Positions 1 through 55,895 of a stretch of 56,954 nucleotides of DNA are shown in pieces. The notes below the pieces were generated by a model. That model did not search any database. It was not told the origin of the DNA and saw only the letters and a program-made list of their open reading frames with translations. A program made the position numbers and the translations under genes. This DNA is from Octopus bimaculoides (taxonomy: Eukaryota): the NCBI RefSeq assembly GCF_001194135.2, contig NC_068984.1:49353946-49410899 (forward strand), written 5' to 3'. Position 1 is the first letter of the stretch; each line of letters opens with the position of its first letter.

Positions 1-1203
1 TATATATATATATATATGTGTGTGTGTGTATATATTACACATACACACATACATATGTTTATCTATGTGTGTGCGTGTGCTTGCAAGTATGAATAAATTT
101 ACATACTCCCAACTTTTTTTACGTACGTATTCATATATACACAAAGAAAAGTATGTTTTTGTTAAAGAATTCCTCTAAAATTAGATGTAACATAGTTACT
201 TTATACAATCATACACACACAAACAGACACACAGACACACAAATAAAGGAACATATGCACATACACATTCACATAGACAATCACACATACACACCCAGAC
301 AAGTGCATGATATTCCTCTATGCACATATTGACAAGTTAGAAACACACACAGACAGACAGACACACACACACACACACACACACACACTATCATTCACTC
401 ACGCAATTGTGCAAACATACACGCTTACTTTCATAAGAATTTACCAACCTACATAGCTCAACTCCTACTTACTTATTACACTAATGCACAGTGCTGTATG
501 TGTAAAAATATACATTGCTGGGTGCACACTGCTTGCATCTCACTACCATACTTAGCAAGTATTTGTGCACCACAGCACATACACACCCTTACATTTGACT
601 ATGCAGCACAGTGTCTAGTAGCATAGCAATAAATATTTGCATGAGCCAACTATTTATATTCACAAACAGATATATACGCATTTGTATATGCAGAAAAATC
701 AGACATTCACACACTAGTATATACTCACGCATATAATCCAAAACAGTCACTGACCTATTTATATATATACATGTATTTATTTGAATGTATATTTGTCTTT
801 ATGTACTTGTTTGTATTTTTGTGCATCTGTGTGGGAGAGGGTTTGTCTAACTGCAAATGTCTGCATACAAATGCACACATACACTCATAACATACAGCAG
901 AATAGACACATGGCAAAGTGCTAGGATTTCTGTCTGTGCAATGCAATCTAAGTTGTGGAAAGTAAATTCGGTAGTTTGAGTACATATAAAATGCAGCTAG
1001 GTAGTGTTGTATGCACATTGTATGAAAGTGAGCAGCCAAAAACATAAATAACTAAATAAATCAGAAAGAAGATAGGTTAGTGAATGATAAAAGTTAGAAT
1101 CTAGGGTGGGGTATGTTAAAGTAACAGGAGTTATTTTGAGGAAAGATGGAAAGAAAGTGAAAATGAGAGACAGAGAGAAAATTAAATAATGAGAGATATT
1201 TGA

Positions 1204-1261
<58 letters not shown>

Positions 1262-12774: not shown

Positions 12775-12881
12775 TTGAAGCCAGCAAGCTGGCAGAAACG
12801 TTAGCATGCTGGGAAAAATACTTTGCGGCAATTAATACATCTTTACATTCTAAGTTCAAATTCCTCTGAGGTCAACTTTGC
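12775..12881 (+). mobile_element. SINE family A head (3'-truncated)
   Basis: gcaagctggcagaaacgttagcatgc..taagttcaaattcctctgaggtcaactttgcc, preceded by (ATT)n. Confidence 0.8.
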
Positions 12882-13085
12882 CGATGCTGTCAGTAAGGTG
12901 AGGGTTGGCAATGAGAACAGTGAAGAATTCCGGGTAGAGGTAGGGGTCCACCAAGGTTCAGTCCTCATCCCCCTCCTATTTATCATAGTCCTCCAGGCAA
13001 TAACAAAGGAATTCAAGACAGGCTGCCCCTGGGAGCTCCTATATGCTGATGACCTTGCTCTAATTGCTGAATCACTATCAGAACT
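12882..13085 (+). mobile_element. RTE LINE RT core fragment (YADD)
   Basis: DAVSKVRVGNENSEEFRVEVGVHQGSVLIPLLFIIVLQAITKEFKTGCPWELLYADDLALIAES, uninterrupted. Confidence 0.9.
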
Positions 13086-13089
13086 TGTC

Positions 13090-13480
13090 TTCGATATTAT
13101 TCAGGCAAGCCTTCTTTGCCTTTTATTTGAGGTTTTTTGCATCAGTGATAGGTTTGTCACTATCTGGATCTCTTTGGTCTTTCTAATTGTTACTTTCTAA
13201 ATCAGGAAAAGCAATGGTAGGTCTGTCAGTATTTAGGTGTCTGTGGTCATCATTGTTAACTTGTAGGCCATGAGACTTTTTAAATTTCTGACTAAGCTTC
13301 ATGAACGGAGCTTGCTTTGAATCTTCATACTTCAGTGCAATTCATAAGAGCACATCACTTGTTGTATTAAGGTACATTTTCAGGCCTATTATTGCTGATT
13401 TGAAGGTTTGTTTGAGCTGTATCAGGCCTCTTCCACCTATTTTTCTTGGGAGATAAAACATGTCTACATCTGATTTTATT
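13090..13480 (-). mobile_element. R4/Dong LINE fragment (post-RT)
   Basis: Minus translation DVDMFYLPRKIGGRGLIQLKQTFKSAIIGLKMYL. Confidence 0.8.
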
Positions 13481-15989: not shown

Positions 15990-18778
15990 CAGGTACACGC
16001 TCAGAATTGGTCCTTTCACACTGGTCATTTTCCAACACTCACCCACCTTTCAACAAACTTGCTAGAAAGCAACACTTCCCTCTCCACCCTCAACTTCCTT
16101 TTCAAGTGAAACTTGAAAAACTTGATGAGGGCTTGCCAAAAGAGGAAAGCATCTGCTTTTGTCCCTTTCAAATGGGTCCCCCATACTACTACCTCTTTCA
16201 GTACAACCACTAGACAAATAAAACTGCCTGCCCCTCTCGGGCCAAAACAAGGGGGCGGGGCAATCTTCATAATGGATTCAGCTGGTAGCCGGATCCATTC
16301 TAATGCGACAGCAGGTGTTCGGCATAAACCCATAGGTCAGCAATACTTGGGCCCTGAACTAGGGCATGCAGAAAAGTTTCATCCTTCTGGGCATATCTAG
16401 AGCAGGTCCAGCTGACGGCACTTCCGTGTCTGTAAAGTTTATCTCGAATAGGCGGCACTTCGTGACAGCACTGCCAGGCAAGGAAGGGATTTCTGGAAGT
16501 TATCCATAGGCCCAGTCCCAAAAGTTATCCGAAACAGACCGGTTAGTTGATCTTCATTGACACCTAGAGTTTCTCCGAGAACGTTGTCACACTTTCCCTG
16601 CACTAGCCCTCTATAGAACGCTAGAGTGGAACTACTACTGACCACATTTCCCACCTGGCAGAGGGCTGTGAGTGCTTGACAGCACTTGAGGTGCCAAGAG
16701 CTCCTCCTCGGTCTATACCTAATCCAGGTTTGAAGCTCAGTCAAAGAAACAATATTTGGAAAAGTGTACCTGACAAATGGTGACCACACCTGCTCACTGT
16801 CAAGGAAACGCTGGAGATGCTGCAACCTCAGCACATGTCTGTGCATCAGTAACCATGGCATGCCCAAGTCTCCATTCAGCGGCTATTGACAGCAGATGGA
16901 GCGCGTGACCAGTGGAAAGCGCCTCTTCCACAGAAAGCGGAAGAGTAAGCACACCAGTTTGGCCAACCAGCAAACGGTAAAGCAGTAATAGATGATGGAT
17001 GCAATGTACGCATTTGTCACCTCCGCTCGACCTTTCAGAGACAGCTTCCTCTCGACCCACTTCTGAGTGACATTGGCTACCCTGCTCGTCACCTCGTTCC
17101 AGTTTTTCTGCACCTGGAGGTCTGGACCAAACCAGACTCTAAGCAATTTAACCTGACCGTCTGTCTAGCGCCCCACGACGTTGATGAATGACGTGGACTT
17201 TCCTCTCCAAGTACCGAGTTGCAAACTCACTAACATTTTCGCGTTAATTTTTTCTCCTGTCACCGGTTCATATTTTTTTAGTGTGTTGCCAATTAGATCT
17301 ACATGCCTGTGGCTTGACACTATGACGGTGACATCGCCAGCGTAGGCAGACACACTTCTCCCACATCCTAGATCCCGCAGAACACCCCTCAAAGTCTTCC
17401 AACTCCCGCAGTAATGGAACAGTACATACAGAAGGGAGGAGAAAGGGAACTCTTGATGGACCGAACGCAAGATGCTGAAAGGCTCCGACAGGTGACCATT
17501 CACCCGGACAACCGAGCAGATGCCGCTGTACAAAGCAGCGATCCAATCGCGGAAAACTGGACCAAAACCGGCTGCCTTGAGGATAGCTGCCAAGTATTGA
17601 TGGTCGACCCTATCCGTCTTACTATTCGTTCCGAACAGTCGAGCAAAGTGCTGCTGAAAAGCCGCACACATCTGTTTCGGTTCGAACACCTTGCATCCGT
17701 TTTGATCCACCAAATACCGAATGGTGGCTTTATTTCCACTTTCCGCCTCCGCTACGCGGGAGCATCGTAACGTTTCGTTCTCTCCCCGCTTAGTGAACGT
17801 ACCTTAGCTTTGACAACGCAACCTTCGTGTTTGCGTTGAAAAATTGGTCGAGGGCCAACTTCGCTGCCAACACGCCGGTTACGATGTCTGTTCTAAGCGG
17901 CTCTTCTGACTTTCTAACTAAATCTCCCTCTATTCTATTTCGTTCTATCCCTAATACCTTGCTAAACCTAAGTGATTCTACTCTTATTGCTCTTTTAAGA
18001 GCAAACCACCAGCTGTTGTTGACGATTGCCCCCACTCAACGTCCGCTTAACTAATTCGCTAATTCGGTCTCTGTAAGCTTGACACGCCGGTAACGATGTG
18101 TTCAGCCCACGTGTGTAACCGACCATGTAAAACTGTGAACACCTTATGCTAGCCTTGTTCGCTGGCCTACAAAATGTCCTACCTAAATACGATCTAGATA
18201 GTCCGATGCAGTTTGTCCAAGTCCATACTGGCACATTCGAGTAATCTAGTAGTTACCTGTCGGGCAATTGAAAACGTCTGAGCAGGTTTTTGAGGCTTTT
18301 CACACCACTATCAGATATTCCCACGCAATCGCAATCAAAACGTCCATCTAAGACAGCGTTCCAATCTCCTACTAACACTAAAGTCCGAGGCGTTTCCAGG
18401 AAAACCTCCAGACGCTTGAAGTAATCAGACCACCCTGACCCTGTTGGAGCATAGGCAGCCACCATTCTGAAAGCACCGCTGTCACTGCTGTTCAAATCTA
18501 GGACCCCAACTTACCTTCTGGATCCAGGAAGACTGCCTTTATTTTTCTATTCCAGACCCTTCCGGAAAAGCACTGAAGTACCACCACTGCTCCTTCCCGG
18601 CCGACACAGAAATAGAAAAATCTCGTATCCACCGAAAAAGGTGATGAGGTCTCGTGAGTCGGATAATGGCTGAAACATCTACACTAAGGCACCTCAAGTC
18701 ATTTAAATAGTGACCTTGTTTCCAAGGCGACTCGAGGCCCCTCTCATTTATACAACCTATTTTGAGCATCAGCATGTT
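15990..18778 (-). pseudogene. Tx1-type ORF2 (APE endonuclease-RT-C-terminal Cys motif), frameshifted
   Basis: LKIGCINERGL; AAYAPT..LVLVGDWNAVLD; DRVDHQYL..WIAALY..RSVHQEFPFSSLLY..SAYAGDVTVIV; RKLSLKGRAEV; CSRYAQKDETFLHAL. Confidence 0.9.
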
Positions 18779-20964: not shown

Positions 20965-21160
20965 TATAATTTTTTTCTACTCTAGGCACAAGGCCCGAAA
21001 TTTTGGGGAGAGGGCTAGTCGATTAGATCGACCCTAATACGCAACTAGTACTTAATTTATCGACCCCGAAAGGACGAAAGGCAAAGTTGACCTCGGTGGA
21101 ATTTGAATTCAGAACGTAAAGACATGCGAAATACCGCCAAGCACTTCGCCCGGCGTGCTA
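20965..21160 (-). mobile_element. SINE family A
   Basis: ggcacaaggcccgaaatt..tttatcgaccccgaaaggacgaaaggcaaagttgacctcggtggaatttgaa. Confidence 0.9.
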
Positions 21161-27357: not shown

Positions 27358-27810
27358 NNNNNNNNNNNNNNNNNNNNNNNNNNNNNNNNNNNNNNNNNNN
27401 NNNNNNNNNNNNNNNNNNNNNNNNNNNNNNNNNNNNNNNNNNNNNNNNNNNNNNNNNNNNNNNNNNNNNNNNNNNNNNNNNNNNNNNNNNNNNNNNNNNN
27501 NNNNNNNNNNNNNNNNNNNNNNNNNNNNNNNNNNNNNNNNNNNNNNNNNNNNNNNNNNNNNNNNNNNNNNNNNNNNNNNNNNNNNNNNNNNNNNNNNNNN
27601 NNNNNNNNNNNNNNNNNNNNNNNNNNNNNNNNNNNNNNNNNNNNNNNNNNNNNNNNNNNNNNNNNNNNNNNNNNNNNNNNNNNNNNNNNNNNNNNNNNNN
27701 NNNNNNNNNNNNNNNNNNNNNNNNNNNNNNNNNNNNNNNNNNNNNNNNNNNNNNNNNNNNNNNNNNNNNNNNNNNNNNNNNNNNNNNNNNNNNNNNNNNN
27801 NNNNNNNNNN
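27358..27810. other. Assembly gap; others at 4611-4648, 6040-6049, 34563-34769, 35323-35332, 48154-48462, 50724-50814, 51745-52327
   Basis: N runs, nearly all bordered by (TA)n, (GA)n or (TG)n. Confidence 1.
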
Positions 27811-30471
27811 NTATATATATATATATATATATATCATTAGCAACTATTCAGAACTGAAGGTCGAGTAGAATCGTGATTAACACCGGTTCAGATTAGACAA
27901 ATCAGTCCACTTTTGGGATTTCAATCAATGAAAGAGAAGCTTTTGAAGCTATATACTAAAACTGTGATCCATTTGCCCTTCACTTTAGTCTATATACACT
28001 AAAGAAGAGATGTTGTCTTTCAAATTTAAACACATATTCCACATAATCTACACAAATGGATTCTAGCGATATGAACGATATTAAAAGGGTTTTTCTTTTT
28101 CAGCTGAAACAGTGCAAGCTTTCCAACAATCATTGGTCTTCTCAAGAACTGCATGCATTCATTTGGAGAATTTTTGTCTCTAGTCACTTTCTTAGTACAT
28201 TTAATAGAACTGTGTATATACCCTATGGATGTGCTTTTCCCCAATACTTCTGCAAACGAAATTTGATAACAAATTATATTCTCTTCTTTATTGTGAATAA
28301 GTTGTTACAATGTATATTGACCCCTTTAACTGTTTACTTTGGCCTACATCAGGAATAGAGTTTTACGAATAATTGTTCCCATCCGGCCCATGATATATCT
28401 AGTTTGTGCTTCAATCTAGACCACAAGCGAAAACTGAAGCATTCGACCGGTTCACGCTGCAGGTTATTCGAGCAGAAATGCATGCTTGTGGTTTCTCAAC
28501 AATGATGAGTATAACAAATATAACTACAGTAACAATGAAAATAATAGAAATCTTATAAAAAGTTATCTATTTACTCATATGAAAACTCAAATGCAGCCTG
28601 AAGAGTAAGGATTTGCCGTTGATTATAAATATCTACAATGGGCTTGAATGAAAATGTTTCAGATGAGGTTCTGCTTACTACATATGTATAAGCAATGTAG
28701 TGAATTTAAATCTTTCGATAAACTGGGATTATCTTTGTAATTAAAAGACAAAATACTCGTTCGCCAGTTTTTTAAACTCTAAAAACAATTAAAGTAAATA
28801 ACTCCAATAATATCAGGAAATTTTTTTTTTAATTACACCGCACCTTCTCAGAAAAGAAACTACATATAGTTTCTAATAACTAAACTGAAAACAAATATTA
28901 ATTATTATACTAGACTACAAAATGACACAATAAATGAGAAACGAATGTATTTCATGGGAAACATTAAGCTGCTATATATCGTGCAAAAGAGAATATATTC
29001 CTGTTTTTTTAGGATGGGGTCATAACTTTAATTGAACAGACTTGTTATCAAAGGCGTTCAACTTATGACGCTTAGATCTTTTTTTGTTTTTCTTAAATCG
29101 CACAAACCTGTTACCAAAAACCTGTAACAATCGCACCGTTTTTTTCTCTTTAATATAAAATTTCTAAGACTACACTATCTAAAACAGTAAGGTTTAGAAA
29201 GGGCAGGATCTTTCCTCAGCAGTTTATGGCAATGTGATTCTCTAACGACTTTAAAGGCACTAGGATTAAAGCAAACATGATCTTTTACTTCGACAAAAGT
29301 CCGCGTATTTATAAGAAATGGGAAACGTTGTGTGGTTGACGCCTCTAGTAACATAAAGGAAAAGAATTCCCAACCACGAACTGATATCACTTTGCTATGT
29401 CGATTTATCGAGAAGCTCCTACTTTATAGTACTGAACTTGAAATTCACAAGGTCTGGGCTTTTTTGAAGGGAGTAAGAACGAGATGCTGAGACGTTTCTG
29501 TGTCAGTAAGTGTATACTAAAACAGAAGGTGGTCTCGAATTGTCAAGATTTAATTTCAAACTTCAAGAAAAAGTATTCAGTTTTTGTTTTCACGTTCAAA
29601 ACCATATGCTTTAAAGCATGGATACTAATGAGAAAAATGTAGACAGAACAAGAATTGCAGAGAGATGCACTTCTTAGGAGGAAACAGTGAACAAAGTTTC
29701 GGGTTTTTAAAGCTTCAAATCGTTAATAAGTAGGAAAAATATGCTATACTTTATGCGTTGAATGACTTTTTGCTCAGAAGAGCAAAAAATGTCGTTATAG
29801 AAGTAAAAGAGAAAGAAAGGAAACGCTAGGCATCCATGAGCCACCTACTCCATAATGGAGCAAAGTGCAAGATATCCATAGTAAAAATATAGTAAGTACA
29901 TAAAAATAATTATACATGAGTTTTCGACATACATTTTTACATATTGTATAAGATGTATAAGAACAATATTAATTTAACATGTGTTTAGATTTATTAGATT
30001 AAAAGTATTATTTTTACACGTGTGTCATTTCGATTAAAAGATTTTATACAGCGTTTTATTTGAGATGAATTTTGAGTGAAAGCTATTTATGCTATTGATT
30101 CATTTGCAATTAGTACATAATTCATTAAATGCATTTGACTGCATGTCTCAGCAAAGAAATACCGAAATTCAATGACATTTGTTTACATAGGTGAGGAATT
30201 CCTACCAAGCTTTGTCTAAGAATTAAGAGTAGACAAGTAATTGCCACGTCCATCGTCTCGTTCTGAGTAAGAAATATTATCTCTATTCAAAGAATAGAAA
30301 ACGTAAATAAAGCTCTGCATTTGAACTCGTTATGTGTAACCCTAAGCCACTGCTAATCTTGCAGACTCATTCGAACTTATTTAACTATTTTTTGTAAAAT
30401 TACAGGTAGGAAATTTTATATTTGTTGGTCGTTATTTTGAAAGAGGTCTGGTATTTATCAAAAATAAAGAT

Positions 30472-36399: not shown

Positions 36400-36643
36400 T
36401 TATTTACATTATTTACATTTGACGGATAATTGTCCTCATCTTGTTTGTTGTTGATACAATGTTCTGGCTGATATACCCTCCAGCATTCATCAGGTGTCTT
36501 GGGGAACTTTCGAATCTGGATTCTCATTCGTAAGGTATCTTTCGATGTTGTTGTTGTTATTATTATTCAGGTCACTGCCTGGAATCGAACTCGGAATCTT
36601 GGGGTTGGTAGCCCGCGCTCTTAACCACTACGCCATATGCCCG
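36400..36643 (-). mobile_element. tRNA-headed SINE family E with mutated hammerhead (36453-36498)
   Basis: Minus: gggcatatggcgtagtggttaagagcgcgggctaccaaccccaagattccgagttcgattcc..(AAT/AAC)n..gacacCTGATGAatgctggagggtatatcagccagaacattgtatc..tgtaaataatgtaaataa. Confidence 0.85.
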
Positions 36644-37049
36644 TTTGTGTTGTATCTTTAAAGACAATGGTGCATGATATGTAGAGTAAGTGGTTATTTC
36701 ATGTAGATTAAGTGATCAAATAGATATCCCCTCACATTTTTTTAAAGGACTTCAGTTTCAATCAATTTGCCACCCTTAGCGGGAACGAAAGCGACTTCTT
36801 ATATCAACGGTTATAAAGGAGTGAAGTCGATTGAATCGATCCTAGTACTTCGCTTTTGTTTGTGTTATCTATCCAGAAGCAAATCCATCTCGGTATGATT
36901 TGAACTGTTTCTGTCAAACTGCCACACTTCACGTTAGCTGTCAATGGGGTCTTCGACTACATGTCCACTTACTACCACTCCCTTTAAATGACCAGTCACT
37001 GAACAATAATCCACTTTATATTTTAAGAGTACGTTAAAGTATGGTACTG

Positions 37050-37144
37050 AACTACTACTACTACTACTATTACTACTACTATTACTACTACTACTGCTAC
37101 TGTTGCTGCTGCTTCTGCTGCTGTTGCTGCTGTAACAGTAGTCT

Positions 37145-37204
<60 letters not shown>

Positions 37205-37215
37205 ACTCACTCTTT
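37050..37215. repeat. Compound (TAC)n-(TGC)n-(CT)n microsatellite; other (AGT/TAC)n tracts at ~37360-37397, 39655-39710, 44122-44195
   Basis: Direct reading. Confidence 0.95.
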
Positions 37216-37358
37216 CTCTCGAATCCTCTCTTCATCTCCCTTTCCCTCTCCCTATCTATCTATTTATCTTATATTTCAATGATTTTCATCAGTAAACTTT
37301 GATATATAAACTTATATGTTGATCAAGGCTATTCAACATTATCATCGACAACAACTGT

Positions 37359-37396
<38 letters not shown>

Positions 37397-37685
37397 TAAC
37401 AACAGCATTGGGCTCAAGTTAAATTCACGAATCTTTAAAGCATTTCAGTAATAATATTATCAGAGTGGACAAGTGTGGCGTATGCTATACGAGAGCAGAA
37501 GGTGATAAATTATTCAATGTTTCTGATGTAGTAAACCATGATCGTGACCATTATTAACGCTAAGATATTGAATATATTTACTTTTCTTCTTTTCATTACG
37601 AACTTTGGTGGTTGTTGTTGCTACTGCTGCGTCTGCTGTTTAGACTCAGGTCATCTTTGATTTAGCATACCTTTGATCAAATGGG

Positions 37686-38010
37686 TGGAGGCGCAATGGC
37701 CTAGTCGTTAGGGCAGCGGACTCGCGGTAGGAGGATCGCGGTTTCGATCGATTCCCAGACCGGGTGTTGTGAGTGTTTATTGAGCGAAAACACCTAGAGC
37801 TCCACAAGGCTCCGGCAGGAGGTGGTGGCGACCCTTGTTGTACTCTTTCACCTCGACTTTCTCGCACACGTTCTTCCTGTTTCTTGAGTAACGCTGCGAT
37901 GGACTGGCGTCTCGTCTAGTTGGGGTGAACACATACGCCATAGAAACCGGGAAACCGGTCCCATGAGCCTTGCTAGGCTTTGAAAGGATATAAATAAAAA
38001 TAATAATGAT
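37686..38010 (+). mobile_element. SINE with family C head/body but a different 3' module
   Basis: Matches 10561-10755, then gtaacgctgcgatggactggcgtctcgtc..catagaaaccgggaaaccggtcccatgagcc and an A-rich end. Confidence 0.85.
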
Positions 38011-38074: not shown

Positions 38075-38295
38075 TAAGGCGGCGAGCCGCCAGAATCGTT
38101 ATCGTGTCGTGTAAAATGCTTAGCGGCATTTCATCCGTCATTGCGTTCCCAGTTCAAATGCCGCCGAGGTCGACATTGCCTTTCATCCTCTCGGGGTTGA
38201 TAAAATGAACACCAGTTGCGTACTGGGGTTGATGTAATCGACTTACCCCTACCCCAGACTTGCTTGCCTTGTGTCAAAATTTGAAACAAATATCT
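38075..38295 (+). mobile_element. SINE family A, full length
   Basis: aaggcggcgagc..cagttcaaatgccgccgaggtcgacattgcctttcatcc..gccttgtgtcaaaatttgaaac. Confidence 0.9.
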
Positions 38296-38378
38296 TTTCC
38301 TTATGTAAAAGTGTATGGGGTCATTTGAGGGAAATTTGGCACTAGATCTAACAGACTACGTAGAAGCTCCACTATTGA

Positions 38379-38619
38379 CGAGCATATGGTGTAGTGGTTA
38401 AGAGCTCGGGCTACTAACCCCAAGATTCCGAGTTCGAATAATAATAACAATAATATTAATAATAATAACATCATCGAAAAATACCTTAGGAATGAGGACC
38501 CAGGTTCGAAATTTCCCCAAAACACCTGATGAAGGCTGGAGGGTATATCAGCCGAAACGTTGTGTTAACAACAAACAAGATGAGGACAAATATCCGTCAA
38601 TTGTAAATAATGTAAATAA
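38379..38619 (+). mobile_element. tRNA-headed SINE family E with intact hammerhead
   Basis: A-box tggtgtagtggtt, GGG-ctactaa-CCC arm, B-box gagttcga, (AAT)n, body, hammerhead 38521-38566, tail (TGTAAATAA)2. Confidence 0.85.
38521..38566 (+). ncRNA. Minimal type-I hammerhead ribozyme
   Basis: AACAC-CUGAUGA-A-GGCUG[GAGGGUAUAU]CAGCC-GAA-ACGU-U-GUGUU: 5-bp stems I and II, extra A after A9, palindromic ACGU stem III, GUU site after 38561. Confidence 0.8.
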
Positions 38620-38629
38620 TGACTTATTT

Positions 38630-38760
38630 TTATCTTTTACTTCCTTCAGTCATTAGACTGAGGCCATACTGGAATTTTTAGTCGAATAAATCGACCCGGT
38701 AGTTTTTTTTTTAAAAAGCCTGGTACTTATTCTATGGGACTTTTTGCCGAACTGCTAAAT
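38630..38760 (-). mobile_element. SINE family B 3' part
   Basis: cagtcattagactgaggccatactgg..agcctggtacttattctat..gccgaactgctaa. Confidence 0.75.
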
Positions 38761-39326
38761 GAACCATTGTTCAGTGCTCTTGTAGACCCTTCGATATGGA
38801 GAATATGACGGAAATAAAGTAGATGGGAAAATAAAGAAAGAAAACATATATGAATTAATGAATGAATGTGGATGGGAGAACGAGATAATGCAAAGAAAAC
38901 AATAAAAGAAAGAATGAGGAAATAAATAAAAAGAAACGAAATAATCGCAAGACAATCAAAGAATGATGAATGAAAGAACGAATTTTTTAAATGTTTTGTT
39001 AGTTTCGCTCATTGGACTGCATCCATGCTGGGAGTACTGCAATCGAGGATTCTTAGCTCCATGATTGACCAAGAGATCGGGAGTAAAAAGTCAAGCAAAT
39101 ATGGATATTCAAGGAATTACAGACCTGGAATCAGAAATAGGACTCGTACAAAGAAATACCGAAGAGACTAGAGGCGAGTGCAGCCAATGCTGTAAAACAG
39201 TTCGTACCTAAGTGAGATTGAAGATACATCAAGGCAAGGAGTGTCTGAAGAAATCAAAGTAGTAAAGGTCATTAGACAGTGAAACACGAAAGCGCATGCT
39301 AAAACACATATCCAAATTAAATAGGC

Positions 39327-47312: not shown

Positions 47313-47990
47313 CAGGGTGTTCCATAAAGGGCGCCGAATTTAAAAGGTGAATAATTAAAACGAATTCTTATAAACATGGTTATATTTTGCATATTTCTAA
47401 TGATTTATGTATCCCGTTTAGGTATGGAACGCAATGTCGGTGATATGTCCACCTGTACTGAGTCTGCATACATTTATGCGCTCCTCGATATCTCCGATAA
47501 CTCTCTCACAGATGTGTGGCCCAATGCCTCCAATCACAAGCCTGATTTCAGCCTTAAGTTCAGGAATTGTACGAGATTTCTTGATGTATACCTGTGATTT
47601 CGCATACCCCATAAGAAGAAATCACAAGAGTTAAGATCGCAGGACCTTGGTGGACATTGCTGGTCATCATGCATGGATATCACTCGTTGCGGAAATTTTT
47701 CGTAAGTAATGCAAGTGTTTGGCGCGAAGTGTGGCAGATCGCTCCATCCTGGAGTTGACAACCAGTGGTTGTCAATCTCCGCATCTTCTAAGTTCGGACA
47801 TAATTGAGTGGATAGCATGTTTCGGTAGCATTCTCCATTTATGGTAACTGCATTCCCCTTCATCATTTTCAAAAAAGTACGGTCCAAGCACTCCACCTGC
47901 TCCAAAATCACACCACACAGTCACTTTCAGTGGATGTATTTCATGCACTTGCATTATTTGAGGACTTTCACTTCTTCAAATGCGGCAGTT
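47313..47990 (-). mobile_element. Tc1/mariner-superfamily remnant (DD41D type): 3' half of transposase and one TIR
   Basis: HPLKVTVWC..GVLGPYFFEN..QDGAICHT..PPRSCDLNSCDFFLWG; TIR starts CAGGGTG at 47313 directly after TA. Confidence 0.9.
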
Positions 47991-51743: not shown

Positions 51744-53302
51744 CNNNNNNNNNNNNNNNNNNNNNNNNNNNNNNNNNNNNNNNNNNNNNNNNNNNNNNNN
51801 NNNNNNNNNNNNNNNNNNNNNNNNNNNNNNNNNNNNNNNNNNNNNNNNNNNNNNNNNNNNNNNNNNNNNNNNNNNNNNNNNNNNNNNNNNNNNNNNNNNN
51901 NNNNNNNNNNNNNNNNNNNNNNNNNNNNNNNNNNNNNNNNNNNNNNNNNNNNNNNNNNNNNNNNNNNNNNNNNNNNNNNNNNNNNNNNNNNNNNNNNNNN
52001 NNNNNNNNNNNNNNNNNNNNNNNNNNNNNNNNNNNNNNNNNNNNNNNNNNNNNNNNNNNNNNNNNNNNNNNNNNNNNNNNNNNNNNNNNNNNNNNNNNNN
52101 NNNNNNNNNNNNNNNNNNNNNNNNNNNNNNNNNNNNNNNNNNNNNNNNNNNNNNNNNNNNNNNNNNNNNNNNNNNNNNNNNNNNNNNNNNNNNNNNNNNN
52201 NNNNNNNNNNNNNNNNNNNNNNNNNNNNNNNNNNNNNNNNNNNNNNNNNNNNNNNNNNNNNNNNNNNNNNNNNNNNNNNNNNNNNNNNNNNNNNNNNNNN
52301 NNNNNNNNNNNNNNNNNNNNNNNNNNNACGACTTACTATCGTATATGTACATGTTACATCAACCTCTGTGAGTGTATATGTGAACCCGTCTCTGCAGTTT
52401 TCTACAGTTATCAAACAAAAGAATTCTTTATCTCACATAATTGTTTTCTTTATTTTTTCTCCCAATATTTAGTTTAACTCACTAAAAATCTTGTTTGTTT
52501 CAACCTGAATTGATCTTCAGTGAAATTTACCTAATTTCCATTTATTGCTTCTCAGAATTGCACGGTTTCAACCATCATTTACTATTATACATTCTGGTAA
52601 GCACAGTCATCGATGTAGTTATACATACATACATACATACATACATACATACATACATACATAACCGCTGAATAAAATAGAGAGTGGAGCCTTTAAACTC
52701 CCAAGATACGCCTGAAAATGTCGACTATGTCATATTTCGGTTGAAGACATTACAAATGTGATTGCAAATTTCTCGAAAATGTCATCAAAATATATTACCT
52801 TCCAATGCGACATCGTGTTGCTGCTAACACATTATAAATGCCATTCATCAGAAAGCCTGTCTTAGGATGAATATAATAAACATTTCTGACGTTGAATTAT
52901 ATTCACACGTTTCGATACATGAAATATTAATAGAAAATTTCCGTCAAAACTTTCGCCAAATGCAAATGCAATAAGCTTGGCACAGTTTCTTAAAAGAGGA
53001 AACAAAAATCGTATATTGGTGTAGAGATCTCCAGATCAGAAGATGTGAATGTTCCATTCAACATCAATGAAAAAAAGTGAACTACAACTTTTCCACCTAG
53101 ACTGCACATGTATGTTTGTATCATTGTGTGGTTGGCTGTGTCACTAAATGTTAAAAAAGTCAGTTTTCATGCAAAGAAAGATAACCTTCCAACACAACAT
53201 TCAACAATTTTAATCTTTAAGTGAAACAGTATCAAAATACTTTAGATTGTGTGTGTGTGCGCGCGCGCGCGTGTGTATGTGTCTCCGTGTTTGAGTGTGT
53301 GC

Positions 53303-55679: not shown

Positions 55680-55895
55680 ATACATTCTTTTCTACTCTAG
55701 GCAGCACAAAACCTGAAATTTTTTTTTTGTGGGGGGGGCAGTCGATTAGATCAACCCTAGTACGTAACTGGTACTTAATTTATCAACCACGAAAGGATGA
55801 AAGGCAAAGTCGACCTCGGCGGAATTTGAACCCAGAACGTAAAGATAGACGAAATACGGCGTGCTAACGTCTCTGCCAGCTCTCCGCCTTACAAC
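55680..55895 (-). mobile_element. SINE family A
   Basis: aactggtacttaatttatcaaccacgaaaggatgaaaggcaaagtcgacctcggcggaatttgaac. Confidence 0.9.

What the first reader, a model, noticed from the sequence alone, without database searches (positions are those of the whole stretch)
38379..38619. tRNA-headed SINE carrying an intact hammerhead ribozyme (two copies in window)
Seen: a ~240-bp element with Pol III A/B boxes, an (AAT)n linker, a hammerhead fold (38521-38566) and a (TGTAAATAA)2 tail; a second, inverted copy lies at 36400-36643. Established: minimal type-I hammerheads with palindromic stem III occur in Penelope-like element (PLE) termini, in retrozymes and in the schistosome Sm-alpha repeat, and an extra nucleotide after A9 is tolerated in the CChMVd viroid hammerhead. 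Inference: a Pol III-transcribed, self-cleaving non-autonomous retroelement with a PLE-derived 3' part, possibly mobilised by Penelope RT/GIY-YIG machinery rather than by a LINE. Cleavage after 38561 would remove the ~58-nt tail, so cleavage has to be reconciled with retrotransposition (dimer-only or regulated cleavage, or circles). I do not know of a description in cephalopods but cannot search.
Basis: partly seen in the sequence, partly recalled or inferred. Interest (0 to 1): 0.9.

Follow-up and report, generated by a model that had tools for sequence, protein, structure and literature searches.

The report
Octopus SINE carrying Penelope-type hammerhead motif
A short, tRNA-derived mobile element of octopus genomes carries in its 3' half the minimal self-cleaving "hammerhead" RNA motif otherwise typical of Penelope-like retrotransposons, which hints at, but does not prove, that such short elements can be copied by Penelope machinery.

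Summary
Two head-to-head copies of one ~240-266 bp repeat lie at 38366/38380-38619/38631 (+) and 36400-36644 (-), about 86-89% identical. Each has Pol III A and B boxes at the canonical tRNA positions, an (AAT)n linker and a (TGTAAATAA)2 tail.

Copy A holds the only match in the window to a minimal type-I hammerhead descriptor (38521-38566). Shuffled sequence gives 0.0075 matches per window. The motif also shows the published hallmarks of Penelope-like-element (PLE) minimal hammerheads: an extra nucleotide after A9, a G10.1-C11.1 pair, a palindromic C15.2-G16.2 and no helix III.

Copy B is not intact (G12A, A13G, G10.1U, G16.2A).

Related copies occur in an Octopus bimaculoides UniProt ORF and in two Logan contigs. 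Each carries different private core mutations, and the majority consensus restores the whole core.

Rfam and ARAGORN recognise neither the hammerhead nor a tRNA. Covariation support is weak. The 5' strand of stem I is predicted to pair elsewhere in the full-length RNA. Cleavage is untested and, by published analogy, needs dimers.

A PLE origin for the 3' module is plausible but untested, and a LINE partner remains a serious rival. I rate it a new variant of a known kind, of moderate interest.

The parts
38366..38379 (+). Copy A: 5' leader GCTCCACTATTGAC, probably part of the element
   Evidence: The same GCTCCAYWATTG(0-3 nt)AC precedes the tRNA-like part in L010a and L010b. blastn extends the L010 match to window 38367.
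38380..38441 (+). Copy A: tRNA-like head. A box TGGTGTAGTGG at 38387-38397; B box remnant AGTTCGAATAA at 38431-38441, with the 3' part of the tRNA-like region deleted
   Evidence: Sequence. Alignment to copy B, which keeps GTTCGATTCCAGGCAGTGACC. No cloverleaf by ARAGORN or Rfam.
38437..38475 (+). Copy A: (AAT)n-rich linker of variable length
   Evidence: its length and sequence differ between copies, and L010b has a pure (AAT)n.
38476..38520 (+). Copy A: body segment upstream of the hammerhead, including a second B-box-like GGTTCGAAATTTCCCC (38503-38518)
   Evidence: Conserved in copy B, L010a and partly in L011a.
38521..38566 (+). Copy A: intact minimal type-I hammerhead motif. Stem I 38521-25/38562-66; CUGAUGA 38526-32; extra A 38533; stem II 38534-39/38548-53; GAAA 38554-57; C15.2-G16.2 38558-59; U16.1 38560; U17 38561; predicted cleavage 38561|38562
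   Evidence: Only descriptor hit in the window. Shuffles give 0.0075. The covariance model built from four copies scores 86 bits here. Hallmarks listed in PMC4209133 are met.
38567..38619 (+). Copy A: 3' tail, ending in (TGTAAATAA)2 at 38602-38619
   Evidence: Conserved in copy B, L010a and L011a. No conserved secondary structure was found.
38620..38631 (+). Copy A: TGACTTATTTTT, a likely terminal piece of the element with a Pol III-type T-run terminator
   Evidence: L010a has TTACTTATTTT at the same place, and the flanks diverge immediately after it. It is absent from copy B and L011a.
36400..36644 (-). Copy B: a second, inverted copy with a complete tRNA-like head (A box 36625-36635, B box about 36582-36592), linker, body and tail
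   Evidence: Possible 8-bp target-site duplication ACACAAAC/AAACAAAC, matching at 7 of 8 positions (sequence).
36453..36498 (-). Copy B: decayed hammerhead relic. CUGAUGA and stem II are mostly kept; G12A, A13G, G10.1U and G16.2A are changed, and the third pair of stem I is a C.A mismatch
   Evidence: 81 bits to the family model, with the core mismatches visible in the alignment.

Best explanation
The window holds two old, independently inserted copies of an Octopus tRNA-derived SINE family of about 240-266 bp. A full-length unit consists of:
- a short leader;
- a tRNA-like head with A and B boxes at tRNA positions;
- an (AAT)n linker;
- a body;
- a minimal type-I hammerhead of the Penelope-like-element (PLE) kind;
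- a ~55-nt tail with two TGTAAATAA units;
- in some copies, a terminal T-run.

Shown here: the repeat family, the box positions, the hammerhead motif with its PLE hallmarks in copy A, and its presence in the consensus of the related copies.

Inferred life cycle: RNA polymerase III transcribes the unit from the internal promoter and stops at the T-run. The uncleaved ~260-nt RNA is reverse-transcribed at a nicked target by a borrowed reverse transcriptase that recognises the 3' module.

Because this hammerhead type is otherwise known from PLE pseudo-LTRs, the 3' module most probably derives from a PLE, and the PLE RT/GIY-YIG enzyme is the most likely mobiliser (inferred, not shown).

The motif has no helix III, so it should be essentially inactive in a single SINE RNA. 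It could cleave only when two RNAs pair through the palindrome AACGUU to build a shared helix III. This reconciles a ribozyme upstream of the tail with successful retrotransposition.
For: - Family and linkage. Two copies are 86-89% identical over their full length. Further copies are in Logan contigs L010 (full length plus a second head) and L011 (two 5'-truncated copies). A SINE-derived ORF sits in the Octopus bimaculoides proteome (A0A0L8FV75).
- Pol III signals. The A and B boxes are at tRNA numbering. There is no T4 run inside the unit (read directly from the sequence), and a TTTTT lies at the shared 3' end.
- Hammerhead. It is the only descriptor hit, against 0.0075 expected. The extra nucleotide between 9 and 10.1, the G10.1-C11.1 pair, the palindromic 15.2-16.2, a 5-bp helix I and a 6-bp helix II match the features Cervera and de la Pena list as emerging independently of their descriptor (PMC4209133).
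- Consensus. Core mutations are private to each copy: B has G12A/A13G, L010a has G8A, L011a has U4C/A14U. The majority and covariance-model consensus is GACAC CUGAUGA A GGCUGG AGGGUAUA UCAGCC GAAA C(G/A) UU GUGUC; position 16.2 is split G/A two against two. The UniProt peptide PDDGWRVYQLK implies that CUGAUGA and GAAA are kept in a further copy.
- Pairing. 82% of cells are paired, against 17-50% with slid partners. There are two compensatory changes: stem I G-C to A-U, and stem II C-G to U-A.
- Uncleaved templates. All four copies with a 3' end continue past the cleavage site into the same tail.
- Inactivity as a monomer. Stem I has a predicted pairing probability of 0.001 in the full-length RNA, while stem II has 0.99. 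The AACGUU duplex in trans is worth -5.7 kcal/mol. Published single minimal hammerheads do not cleave, and dimeric or trimeric constructs cleave weakly (PMC4209133).
- Arrangement. Pairs on opposite strands close together occur in all three contigs, and the two copies in L011 abut and are both 5'-truncated. This matches what is described for PLE hammerheads and PLE insertions.
Against: - No Rfam hammerhead or tRNA hit at any threshold tried, and no cloverleaf.
- No PLE sequence or ORF was seen next to any copy, and no octopus PLE could be fetched, so PLE derivation of the 3' module is untested.
- A fixed tail made of short repeated units resembles the tails of LINE-dependent SINEs (for example the (TGTAA)n of eel UnaL2/UnaSINE1, from my own knowledge).
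- Covariation is not significant with 4-5 sequences (50 of 500 shuffles reach the observed value).
- At least one of the six copies (copy B), and probably the UniProt copy as inferred from its peptide, has a C.A mismatch in stem I.
- Target-site duplications are ambiguous.
- The leader places the A box about 22-26 nt from the putative 5' end, at the long end for Pol III type-2 promoters (my knowledge).
- Only about six copies were sampled, from the window and two short contigs of unknown species.
Confidence: 0.5

Rival explanations
1. This is an ordinary LINE-dependent tRNA-SINE. The last ~50-60 nt, with the (TGTAAATAA)2 units, come from the 3' end of an octopus LINE whose reverse transcriptase mobilises the element. 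The hammerhead lies in the 'body' as a passenger, captured once from a PLE or another hammerhead-bearing repeat, with no role in mobilisation.
For: The tail is a fixed sequence of short repeated units, as in stringent LINE/SINE pairs (my knowledge). LINE reverse-transcriptase remnants are abundant in the window. SINE bodies are commonly mosaics (PMC5786205 title and abstract). Copies are dispersed, some 5'-truncated, with a plausible short duplication for copy B. Individual copies show no sign of selection on the hammerhead.
Against: No LINE fragment in the window shares the tail. In the papers read here, no LINE is described with this hammerhead type at its 3' end; the ribozymes described in LINEs are HDV-like or twister-like and sit at the 5' end. 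The number of tail units does not vary between copies, so there is no sign of slippage. The abutting, outward-pointing, 5'-truncated pair in L011 is more PLE-like than LINE-like.
Confidence: 0.3
2. This is not a free-standing Pol III SINE but a piece or non-autonomous derivative of a PLE, such as a solo pseudo-LTR or a short internally deleted PLE. It happens to contain a tRNA-like segment and is transcribed by read-through or by a PLE promoter.
For: Short non-autonomous Penelope elements exist (PMC6685494). Animal retrozymes are proposed to be non-autonomous PLE derivatives (bioRxiv 10.64898/2026.07.22.740005). The conserved leader upstream of the tRNA-like +1 position is unusual for a Pol III unit. 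The inverted pairs fit this reading.
Against: The 5' ends of four copies coincide within a few nucleotides, just upstream of a head whose A and B boxes keep exact tRNA numbering, and the unit ends in a T-run. That is what a Pol III transcription unit looks like. No ORF remnant or longer shared flank exists.
Confidence: 0.1
3. This is a retrozyme-like or Sm-alpha-like element. Multimeric transcripts are cut by the hammerhead into unit-length RNAs that circularise and serve as templates.
For: Hammerhead-bearing SINE-like repeats (Sm-alpha, Sj-alpha) and non-LTR retrozymes are established.
Against: Copies are dispersed and inverted, not tandem. All copies begin at the head or leader and end at the tail rather than at the cleavage site. 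The hammerhead lacks the helix III and the loop-loop design of retrozyme and Sm-alpha ribozymes.
Confidence: 0.06
4. The hammerhead-like string is a chance resemblance in an A-rich SINE body.
For: Rfam does not recognise it. Stem I is weak and is predicted not to form in the full-length RNA. At 0.0075 matches per 57 kb, a genome of a few gigabases would yield hundreds of chance matches to the relaxed descriptor (the genome size is from my own knowledge).
Against: The expectation for one ~250-nt family consensus is about 1e-5 (scaled). The strict version gave 0 of 400 shuffles. Three hallmarks outside the catalytic boxes are met. The consensus of independent decayed copies restores every core position except the split 16.2.
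Confidence: 0.04

Closest known systems
Minimal type-I hammerheads of Penelope-like elements (Cervera and de la Pena 2014, PMC4209133; Lunse et al. 2017, cited there)
   Same: CUGAUGA/GAAA core; an unpaired nucleotide between A9 and 10.1; a G10.1-C11.1 pair; a short helix I (5 bp); a longish helix II (6 bp including G.U); no helix III, with a palindromic 15.2-16.2 that can only pair in a dimer. These motifs often occur as single dispersed motifs or as pairs on opposite strands a few hundred bp apart.
   Different: Here the motif is not in a PLE pseudo-LTR next to an RT/GIY-YIG ORF. It lies inside a ~250-bp unit headed by a tRNA-like Pol III promoter. The published dispersed motifs were assumed to be truncated PLEs.
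Sm-alpha / Sj-alpha SINE-like hammerhead repeats of schistosomes (Ferbeyre et al. 1998; Laha et al. 2000; summarised in PMC6765202)
   Same: A short non-coding retroelement with a Pol III-type promoter and a type-I hammerhead in one unit.
   Different: Sm-alpha has a canonical, catalytically proficient hammerhead with a helix III and loop-loop contacts. It is often tandemly repeated and is thought to be processed from multimers. The octopus element has a helix-III-less PLE-type motif 58-70 nt from its 3' end, and it is dispersed. It is found in a mollusc rather than a flatworm.
tRNA-derived SINEs (SINE2), including the octopus families OK, OR1 and OR2 (Ohshima and Okada 1994; OR2 is a CORE-SINE per PMC4758252)
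   Same: tRNA-like head with A and B boxes, composite head-body-tail build, dispersed copies, some 5' truncation, and the host genus.
   Different: No SINE in the literature I could search is described with a PLE-type hammerhead or a PLE partner. I could not read the 1994 sequences, so identity with OK or OR1 is not excluded.
Non-LTR retrozymes of animals (Cervera and de la Pena 2020, PMC7229834; Li et al. 2026 bioRxiv)
   Same: Non-autonomous, non-coding, hammerhead-bearing elements, for which PLEs are proposed as the mobilising partner.
   Different: Retrozymes are tandem repeats that yield 170-400 nt circular RNAs delimited by the cleavage sites, and they have no tRNA-like promoter. This element is dispersed, linear-ended and delimited by a Pol III-like start and stop.

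Membership tests
tRNA-derived SINE (SINE2) | Internal Pol III A and B boxes at tRNA-like positions and spacing | tested here: met
   Copy B has TGGCGTAGTGG at positions 8-18 and GTTCGATTCC at 53-62. It is the only such site in the window, against 0.195 in shuffles. The B box of copy A is truncated.
tRNA-derived SINE (SINE2) | Recognisable similarity of the head to a tRNA (cloverleaf or sequence) | tested here: inconclusive
   ARAGORN finds 0 tRNAs even at 60% thresholds. There is no Rfam tRNA hit at E<=10.
tRNA-derived SINE (SINE2) | Short, non-coding, multi-copy and dispersed, with shared 5' and 3' ends | tested here: met
   Two copies in the window, four copies or fragments on two Logan contigs, and one UniProt ORF. 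The ends are shared.
tRNA-derived SINE (SINE2) | Target-site duplications | tested here: inconclusive
   Copy B has a 7/8 match (ACACAAAC/AAACAAAC). With the extended boundaries, no clear duplication is found for copy A or L010a.
tRNA-derived SINE (SINE2) | 3' tail shared with an autonomous partner in the same genome | not testable with these tools
   No octopus genome, Repbase or Dfam library is available. Nothing in the window shares the tail.
Hammerhead ribozyme, type I (Rfam RF00163) | Conserved core C3-U4-G5-A6-N7-G8-A9, G12-A13-A14, and U16.1-H17 at the cleavage site | tested here: met
   Met in copy A and in the family consensus. Not met in copy B.
Hammerhead ribozyme, type I (Rfam RF00163) | Helices I and II flanking the core | tested here: met
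   5 bp and 6 bp in copy A. Across copies 82% of cells are paired, against 17-50% for slid controls. Stem I is not predicted to form in the full-length RNA.
Hammerhead ribozyme, type I (Rfam RF00163) | Helix III closed by a loop in the same molecule | tested here: not met
   A15.1-C15.2 is followed directly by G16.2-U16.1 with no loop. Pairing is possible only between two molecules.
Hammerhead ribozyme, type I (Rfam RF00163) | Score against the curated covariance model | tested here: not met
   No hit at the gathering threshold or at E<=10, even in a 256-nt search.
Hammerhead ribozyme, type I (Rfam RF00163) | Site-specific self-cleavage | not testable with these tools
   Needs in vitro transcription of monomer and dimer constructs.
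PLE-type minimal hammerhead (min-HHR) | [quoted passage not shown] | tested here: met
   It is A in all five DNA copies and U or C in the UniProt copy. The feature is defined in PMC4209133.
PLE-type minimal hammerhead (min-HHR) | G10.1-C11.1 pair and palindromic 15.2-16.2 without a loop 3 | tested here: met
   G10.1-C11.1 is present in copy A and L011b, and CG at 15.2-16.2 in copy A and L011a. The other copies differ by single changes, two of them CG-to-CA transitions.
PLE-type minimal hammerhead (min-HHR) | Location in the pseudo-LTR of an element encoding a PLE RT and GIY-YIG endonuclease | not testable with these tools
   No PLE ORF or longer shared flank lies next to any of the copies seen. 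The ORFs in the window were not scanned systematically. No octopus PLE DNA was available.
Sm-alpha-like hammerhead SINE | Canonical hammerhead with helix III, plus tandem arrays processed from multimers | tested here: not met
   There is no helix III. The copies are inverted and dispersed, not tandem.
Non-LTR retrozyme | Head-to-tail tandem repeats delimited by hammerhead cleavage sites | tested here: not met
   There are no tandem copies. The copy ends are at the head or leader and at the tail, not at the cleavage site.

The most novel reading that the evidence does not exclude
This family would be the first documented SINE-PLE partnership: a Pol III-transcribed, tRNA-headed SINE that borrowed the hammerhead-containing 3' end of a Penelope-like element and is mobilised by the PLE RT/GIY-YIG enzyme. 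That would explain at least part of the thousands of 'orphan' dispersed minimal hammerheads in animal genomes. It would also make the hammerhead (or its fold) a candidate recognition element, with concentration-dependent dimer cleavage acting as a brake on SINE RNA.
Probability: 0.35. Interest if true: 0.75.

Novelty: new variant of a known kind. Interest (0 to 1): 0.55.

Why it matters
Minimal hammerheads are extremely numerous in animal genomes, but outside full PLEs their genomic context and role are unexplained. The original description assumed they are truncated PLEs.

A tRNA-headed SINE that carries the motif in its consensus offers a concrete alternative carrier. If its 3' module matches an octopus PLE, it would also be the first case of a SINE dependent on a PLE rather than a LINE. 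That would widen the rules of SINE-partner relationships. It would also give a tractable system, a ~260-nt Pol III RNA, for asking what PLE hammerheads do: template recognition, dimer-dependent cleavage or neither.

If instead the tail matches a LINE, the element is an ordinary SINE with a ribozyme fossil in its body. That would be a useful caution for hammerhead censuses.

Tried and rejected
- Rfam at the gathering threshold and at E<=10 on 2.4 kb and on 256 nt gave only noise.
- ARAGORN with relaxed thresholds found nothing.
- Exact-string scans for the hammerhead or tail in viral and metagenome collections gave 0 hits. The eight hits in prokaryotic genomes are chance 18-mers.
- A protein search with a LINE RT fragment, meant to reach cephalopod contigs, gave only contigs under 1 kb.
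- Searching with the open sense frame of the SINE body gave one hit, the O. bimaculoides UniProt ORF. It has no DNA on record.
- An antisense-frame profile against the representative library gave the two useful Logan contigs. Their 'proteins' do not translate under table 11 and read at least one TGA as W, so they look like gene-calling artefacts.
- The covariance model built from four copies found no further diverged copy in the window.
- RNAalifold found no conserved structure in the tail.
- I first read TATTGAC/TAATGAC as the target-site duplication of copy A. I rejected this when the same sequences turned up at both ends of L010a.
- An 'empty target' GCTCCAYWATTGACTTATTTT is absent from the window.
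- tRNA identity could not be assigned.
- The species of SRR11869390/1 could not be found in the literature.
- I did not run a systematic Pfam scan of all window ORFs for a PLE RT or GIY-YIG domain, because nothing else in the window shares the SINE 3' module.
- Literature searches for a hammerhead-bearing SINE in cephalopods, or for a SINE mobilised by a PLE, found none. The 1994 octopus SINE paper, the octopus genome paper and Lunse et al. 2017 are not held.
Full report
**What is there.** Positions 38380-38619 (+) and 36400-36644 (-) are two copies of one repeat. blastn aligns them at 85.7% over 245 nt, and no other copy exists in the window. The repeat finder reports arms of 168 nt at 89% and 60 nt at 93%. 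The window is a draft eukaryotic scaffold: 37% G+C, eight runs of N, many microsatellites and LINE remnants. A profile of the open sense frame of the repeat body retrieved a single protein from 5.8 billion, UniProt A0A0L8FV75 of Octopus bimaculoides, at 83% identity. The host is therefore an Octopus, and the 'protein' is an annotated SINE copy.

**Head.** In copy B the string TGGCGTAGTGG occupies element positions 8-18 and GTTCGATTCC occupies 53-62. These are the positions of the A and B boxes in a tRNA. A regex for the two boxes at tRNA spacing hits only this site in the window, against 0.195 per shuffle. Copy A has the A box (TGGTGTAGTGG) but has lost the distal part of the tRNA-like region, including the CC of the B box. 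The head is no longer a foldable tRNA. ARAGORN finds nothing even at 60% thresholds, and Rfam gives no tRNA hit at E<=10. This is usual for SINE heads. 'tRNA-derived' here rests on the box positions.

**Hammerhead.** Copy A reads AACAC-CUGAUGA-A-GGCUGG[AGGGUAUA]UCAGCC-GAAA-CG-UU|GUGUU at 38521-38566. I wrote a relaxed minimal-hammerhead descriptor:
- stem I of at least 4 bp;
- CUGANGA;
- 0-1 extra nucleotide;
- stem II of at least 4 bp;
- GAAA;
- 0-8 nt;
- U, then H.

It finds exactly this site and nothing else on either strand. 400 dinucleotide-preserving shuffles give 0.0075 hits per window, and none for a strict version.

Cervera and de la Pena list features that emerged in PLE minimal hammerheads although they were not in their descriptor. 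[quoted passage not shown] A short helix I and a longish helix II go with them (PMC4209133). Copy A shows all of them. The motif is therefore a PLE-type minimal hammerhead and not a canonical one. That explains why Rfam's hammerhead models do not see it.

**Copy B is not intact.** It keeps CUGAUGA, the extra A and most of stem II.

**Related copies and consensus.** No public octopus DNA could be searched directly, and string scans of the viral, metagenome and prokaryote collections were empty or gave chance hits. A profile of the antisense frame found two gene-calling artefacts on Logan contigs. L010 (SRR11869390) carries a full-length copy at 72% identity plus the head of a second copy. L011 (SRR11869391) carries two 5'-truncated copies. 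L011 also carries a fragment of another repeat that is abundant in the window, so it comes from a related octopod.

In the hammerhead region each copy has different private changes: G8A in L010a, U4C and A14U in L011a, and G12A/A13G in copy B. The majority consensus and the consensus of the covariance model built from four copies read GACAC CUGAUGA A GGCUGG AGGGUAUA UCAGCC GAAA C(G/A) UU GUGUC, with position 16.2 split G/A two against two. The UniProt peptide (PDDGWRVYQLK) implies that CUGAUGA and GAAA are kept in yet another copy. This is the pattern expected if the source elements carried an intact motif and dead copies decayed independently.

Pairing holds in 82% of cells, against 17-50% when the partners are slid. 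Two pairs show compensatory double changes. With so few sequences this is not significant (50 of 500 shuffles).

**Boundaries.** Three of four full-length copies share GCTCCAYWATTG(0-3 nt)AC just upstream of the tRNA-like start. Copy A and L010a share T(G/T)ACTTATTTT(T) after the tail, and the flanks diverge immediately outside these pieces. Copy A is therefore more likely 38366-38631. The unit ends in a Pol III-type T-run, and no T4 occurs inside it.

Copy B, L011a and the UniProt copy end about 12 nt earlier. Copy B has a plausible 8-bp target-site duplication. With the extended ends, copy A and L010a have none that I can see. The resemblance between the end of the leader (WATTGAC) and the end of the tail (AATGAC) is unexplained.

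**How it most likely works.** Shown: a composite unit with a tRNA-type internal promoter, a terminal T-run, shared 5' and 3' ends, and a PLE-type hammerhead motif in the family consensus. Also shown: every copy with a 3' end runs through the cleavage site into the tail, so the retrotransposed templates were uncleaved.

Inferred: Pol III makes a ~260-nt RNA, and a borrowed reverse transcriptase copies it at a nicked target. The hammerhead is silent in single molecules for three reasons:
- It has no helix III.
- Its stem I 5' strand is predicted to be sequestered. Its pairing probability is 0.001 in the full-length RNA, against 0.99 for stem II.
- Published single minimal hammerheads did not cleave, while dimers and trimers cleaved weakly.

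Two RNAs could pair through AACGUU (-5.7 kcal/mol) to form the shared helix III.

**Which enzyme.** In the literature read here, the only known genomic home of this hammerhead type is the PLE pseudo-LTR and related Terminons. The simplest origin of the 3' module is therefore a PLE, which makes the PLE RT/GIY-YIG enzyme the leading candidate.

One further observation is suggestive. In all three contigs the two copies lie head to head. They are about 1.7 kb apart in the window, with other SINEs between them, and about 210 bp apart in L010. In L011 they abut and are both 5'-truncated with their 3' ends pointing outwards. Inverted 5'-truncated partners and closely spaced hammerheads on opposite strands are described for PLEs. 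The sample is tiny and the region is SINE-dense, so I give this little weight.

Against the PLE partner: no PLE was seen or could be compared, and a fixed tail of short repeat units is also what LINE-dependent SINEs look like. I put PLE mobilisation at roughly 0.35-0.5 and a LINE partner at about 0.3.

**Comparison with what is known.** Functionally the closest systems are the schistosome Sm-alpha/Sj-alpha SINE-like hammerhead repeats and the PLE minimal hammerheads. The element is a member of the tRNA-SINE class by its box positions and its architecture. By four of the motif's five sequence and structure hallmarks it carries a member of the PLE min-HHR class. It fails the definition of a canonical type-I hammerhead (helix III, Rfam score), of Sm-alpha (canonical ribozyme, tandem arrays) and of retrozymes (tandem units delimited by cleavage sites).

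Six full-text searches found no description of a hammerhead-bearing SINE in cephalopods or of a SINE mobilised by a PLE. The nearest statements are that dispersed minimal hammerheads are 'probably related to truncated PLEs', that short non-autonomous Penelope elements exist in butterflies, and that retrozymes may be PLE-dependent. I could not read the 1994 paper on the octopus OK, OR1 and OR2 SINEs, nor any repeat library. The SINE family itself may already have a name; OR2 is excluded as a CORE-SINE only by description.

**Verdict.** Self-cleavage, Pol III transcription and the PLE partnership remain inferences. I rate it a new variant of a known kind, with interest 0.55.

Noticed in passing
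window 36400-36644(-) and 38366-38631(+); L010 664-926(-) and about 1139-1240(+); L011 745-905(-) and about 910-980(+): In all three contigs the two copies of this SINE lie head to head (<- ->). In L011 they abut and are both 5'-truncated with their 3' ends pointing outwards. This resembles the inverted 5'-truncated partners described for PLE insertions. The sample is three, and the window pair has other repeats in between.
   Followed up: partly
window 38366-38379 and 38620-38631; L010 (rc) equivalents: The end of the 5' leader (CTATTGAC / TAATTGAC) resembles the end of the tail (AATAATGAC / AATAATTAC) in both copy A and L010a. This may be a short terminal direct repeat of the element or a target preference. 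No empty site was found in the window.
   Followed up: partly
window 37676-37990 (+): A different tRNA-like SINE lies between the two copies. It has an A-box-like TGGCCTAGTCG, a B-box-like GGTTTCGATCGATTCC and a GC-rich body, and it ends in an AT-rich ATAAATAAAAATAATAATGA. A similar tail string occurs at 38917-38935.
   Followed up: no
window 38080-38260 (+); also 21049-21082 (-), 55772-55805 (-); L011 2-35: This is another abundant octopus repeat (…GCCTTTCATCCTCTCGGGGTTGATAAAATGAACACCAGTTGCGTACTGGGG…) directly upstream of copy A. It is also present on the Logan contig, which ties that contig to a related octopod.
   Followed up: partly
window 16439-17713 (-) and 12823-13200 (+): These are LINE reverse-transcriptase remnants. 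The 12823-13200 ORF hits RVT_1 (E=7e-7). The 17165-17713 ORF matches RT-bearing ORFs at 61-67% and is 73.5% identical at the DNA level to an ENA contig (L001). Neither shares the SINE tail.
   Followed up: partly
window 47534-47911 (-): By eye this ORF resembles the C-terminal part of a mariner/Tc1-type transposase (…PPRSCDLNSCDFFLWG…). Pfam gave no hit at E<=0.01.
   Followed up: partly
UniProt A0A0L8FV75_OCTBM (P0005); Logan ORFs P0006 and P0007 on L011 and L010: These database 'proteins' are translations of SINE copies. The Logan ORFs do not translate under table 11, and P0007 reads at least one TGA as W. They appear to be gene-calling artefacts on eukaryotic DNA under an alternative code.
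   Followed up: partly
window 38503-38518 (+) and 36506-36521 (-): A second B-box-like string (GGTTCGAAATTTCCCC; GATTCGAAAGTTCCCC in copy B) lies just upstream of the hammerhead. The body may itself contain an old tRNA-like fragment.
   Followed up: no
window 37040-37135, 37140-37205, 37355-37396: There are dense microsatellites between the two copies: (ACT)n/(GCT)n, (CT)n, then (ACT)n again. The window also has eight N gaps (for example 27358-27811 and 51745-52327), which shows it is a draft scaffold.
   Followed up: no
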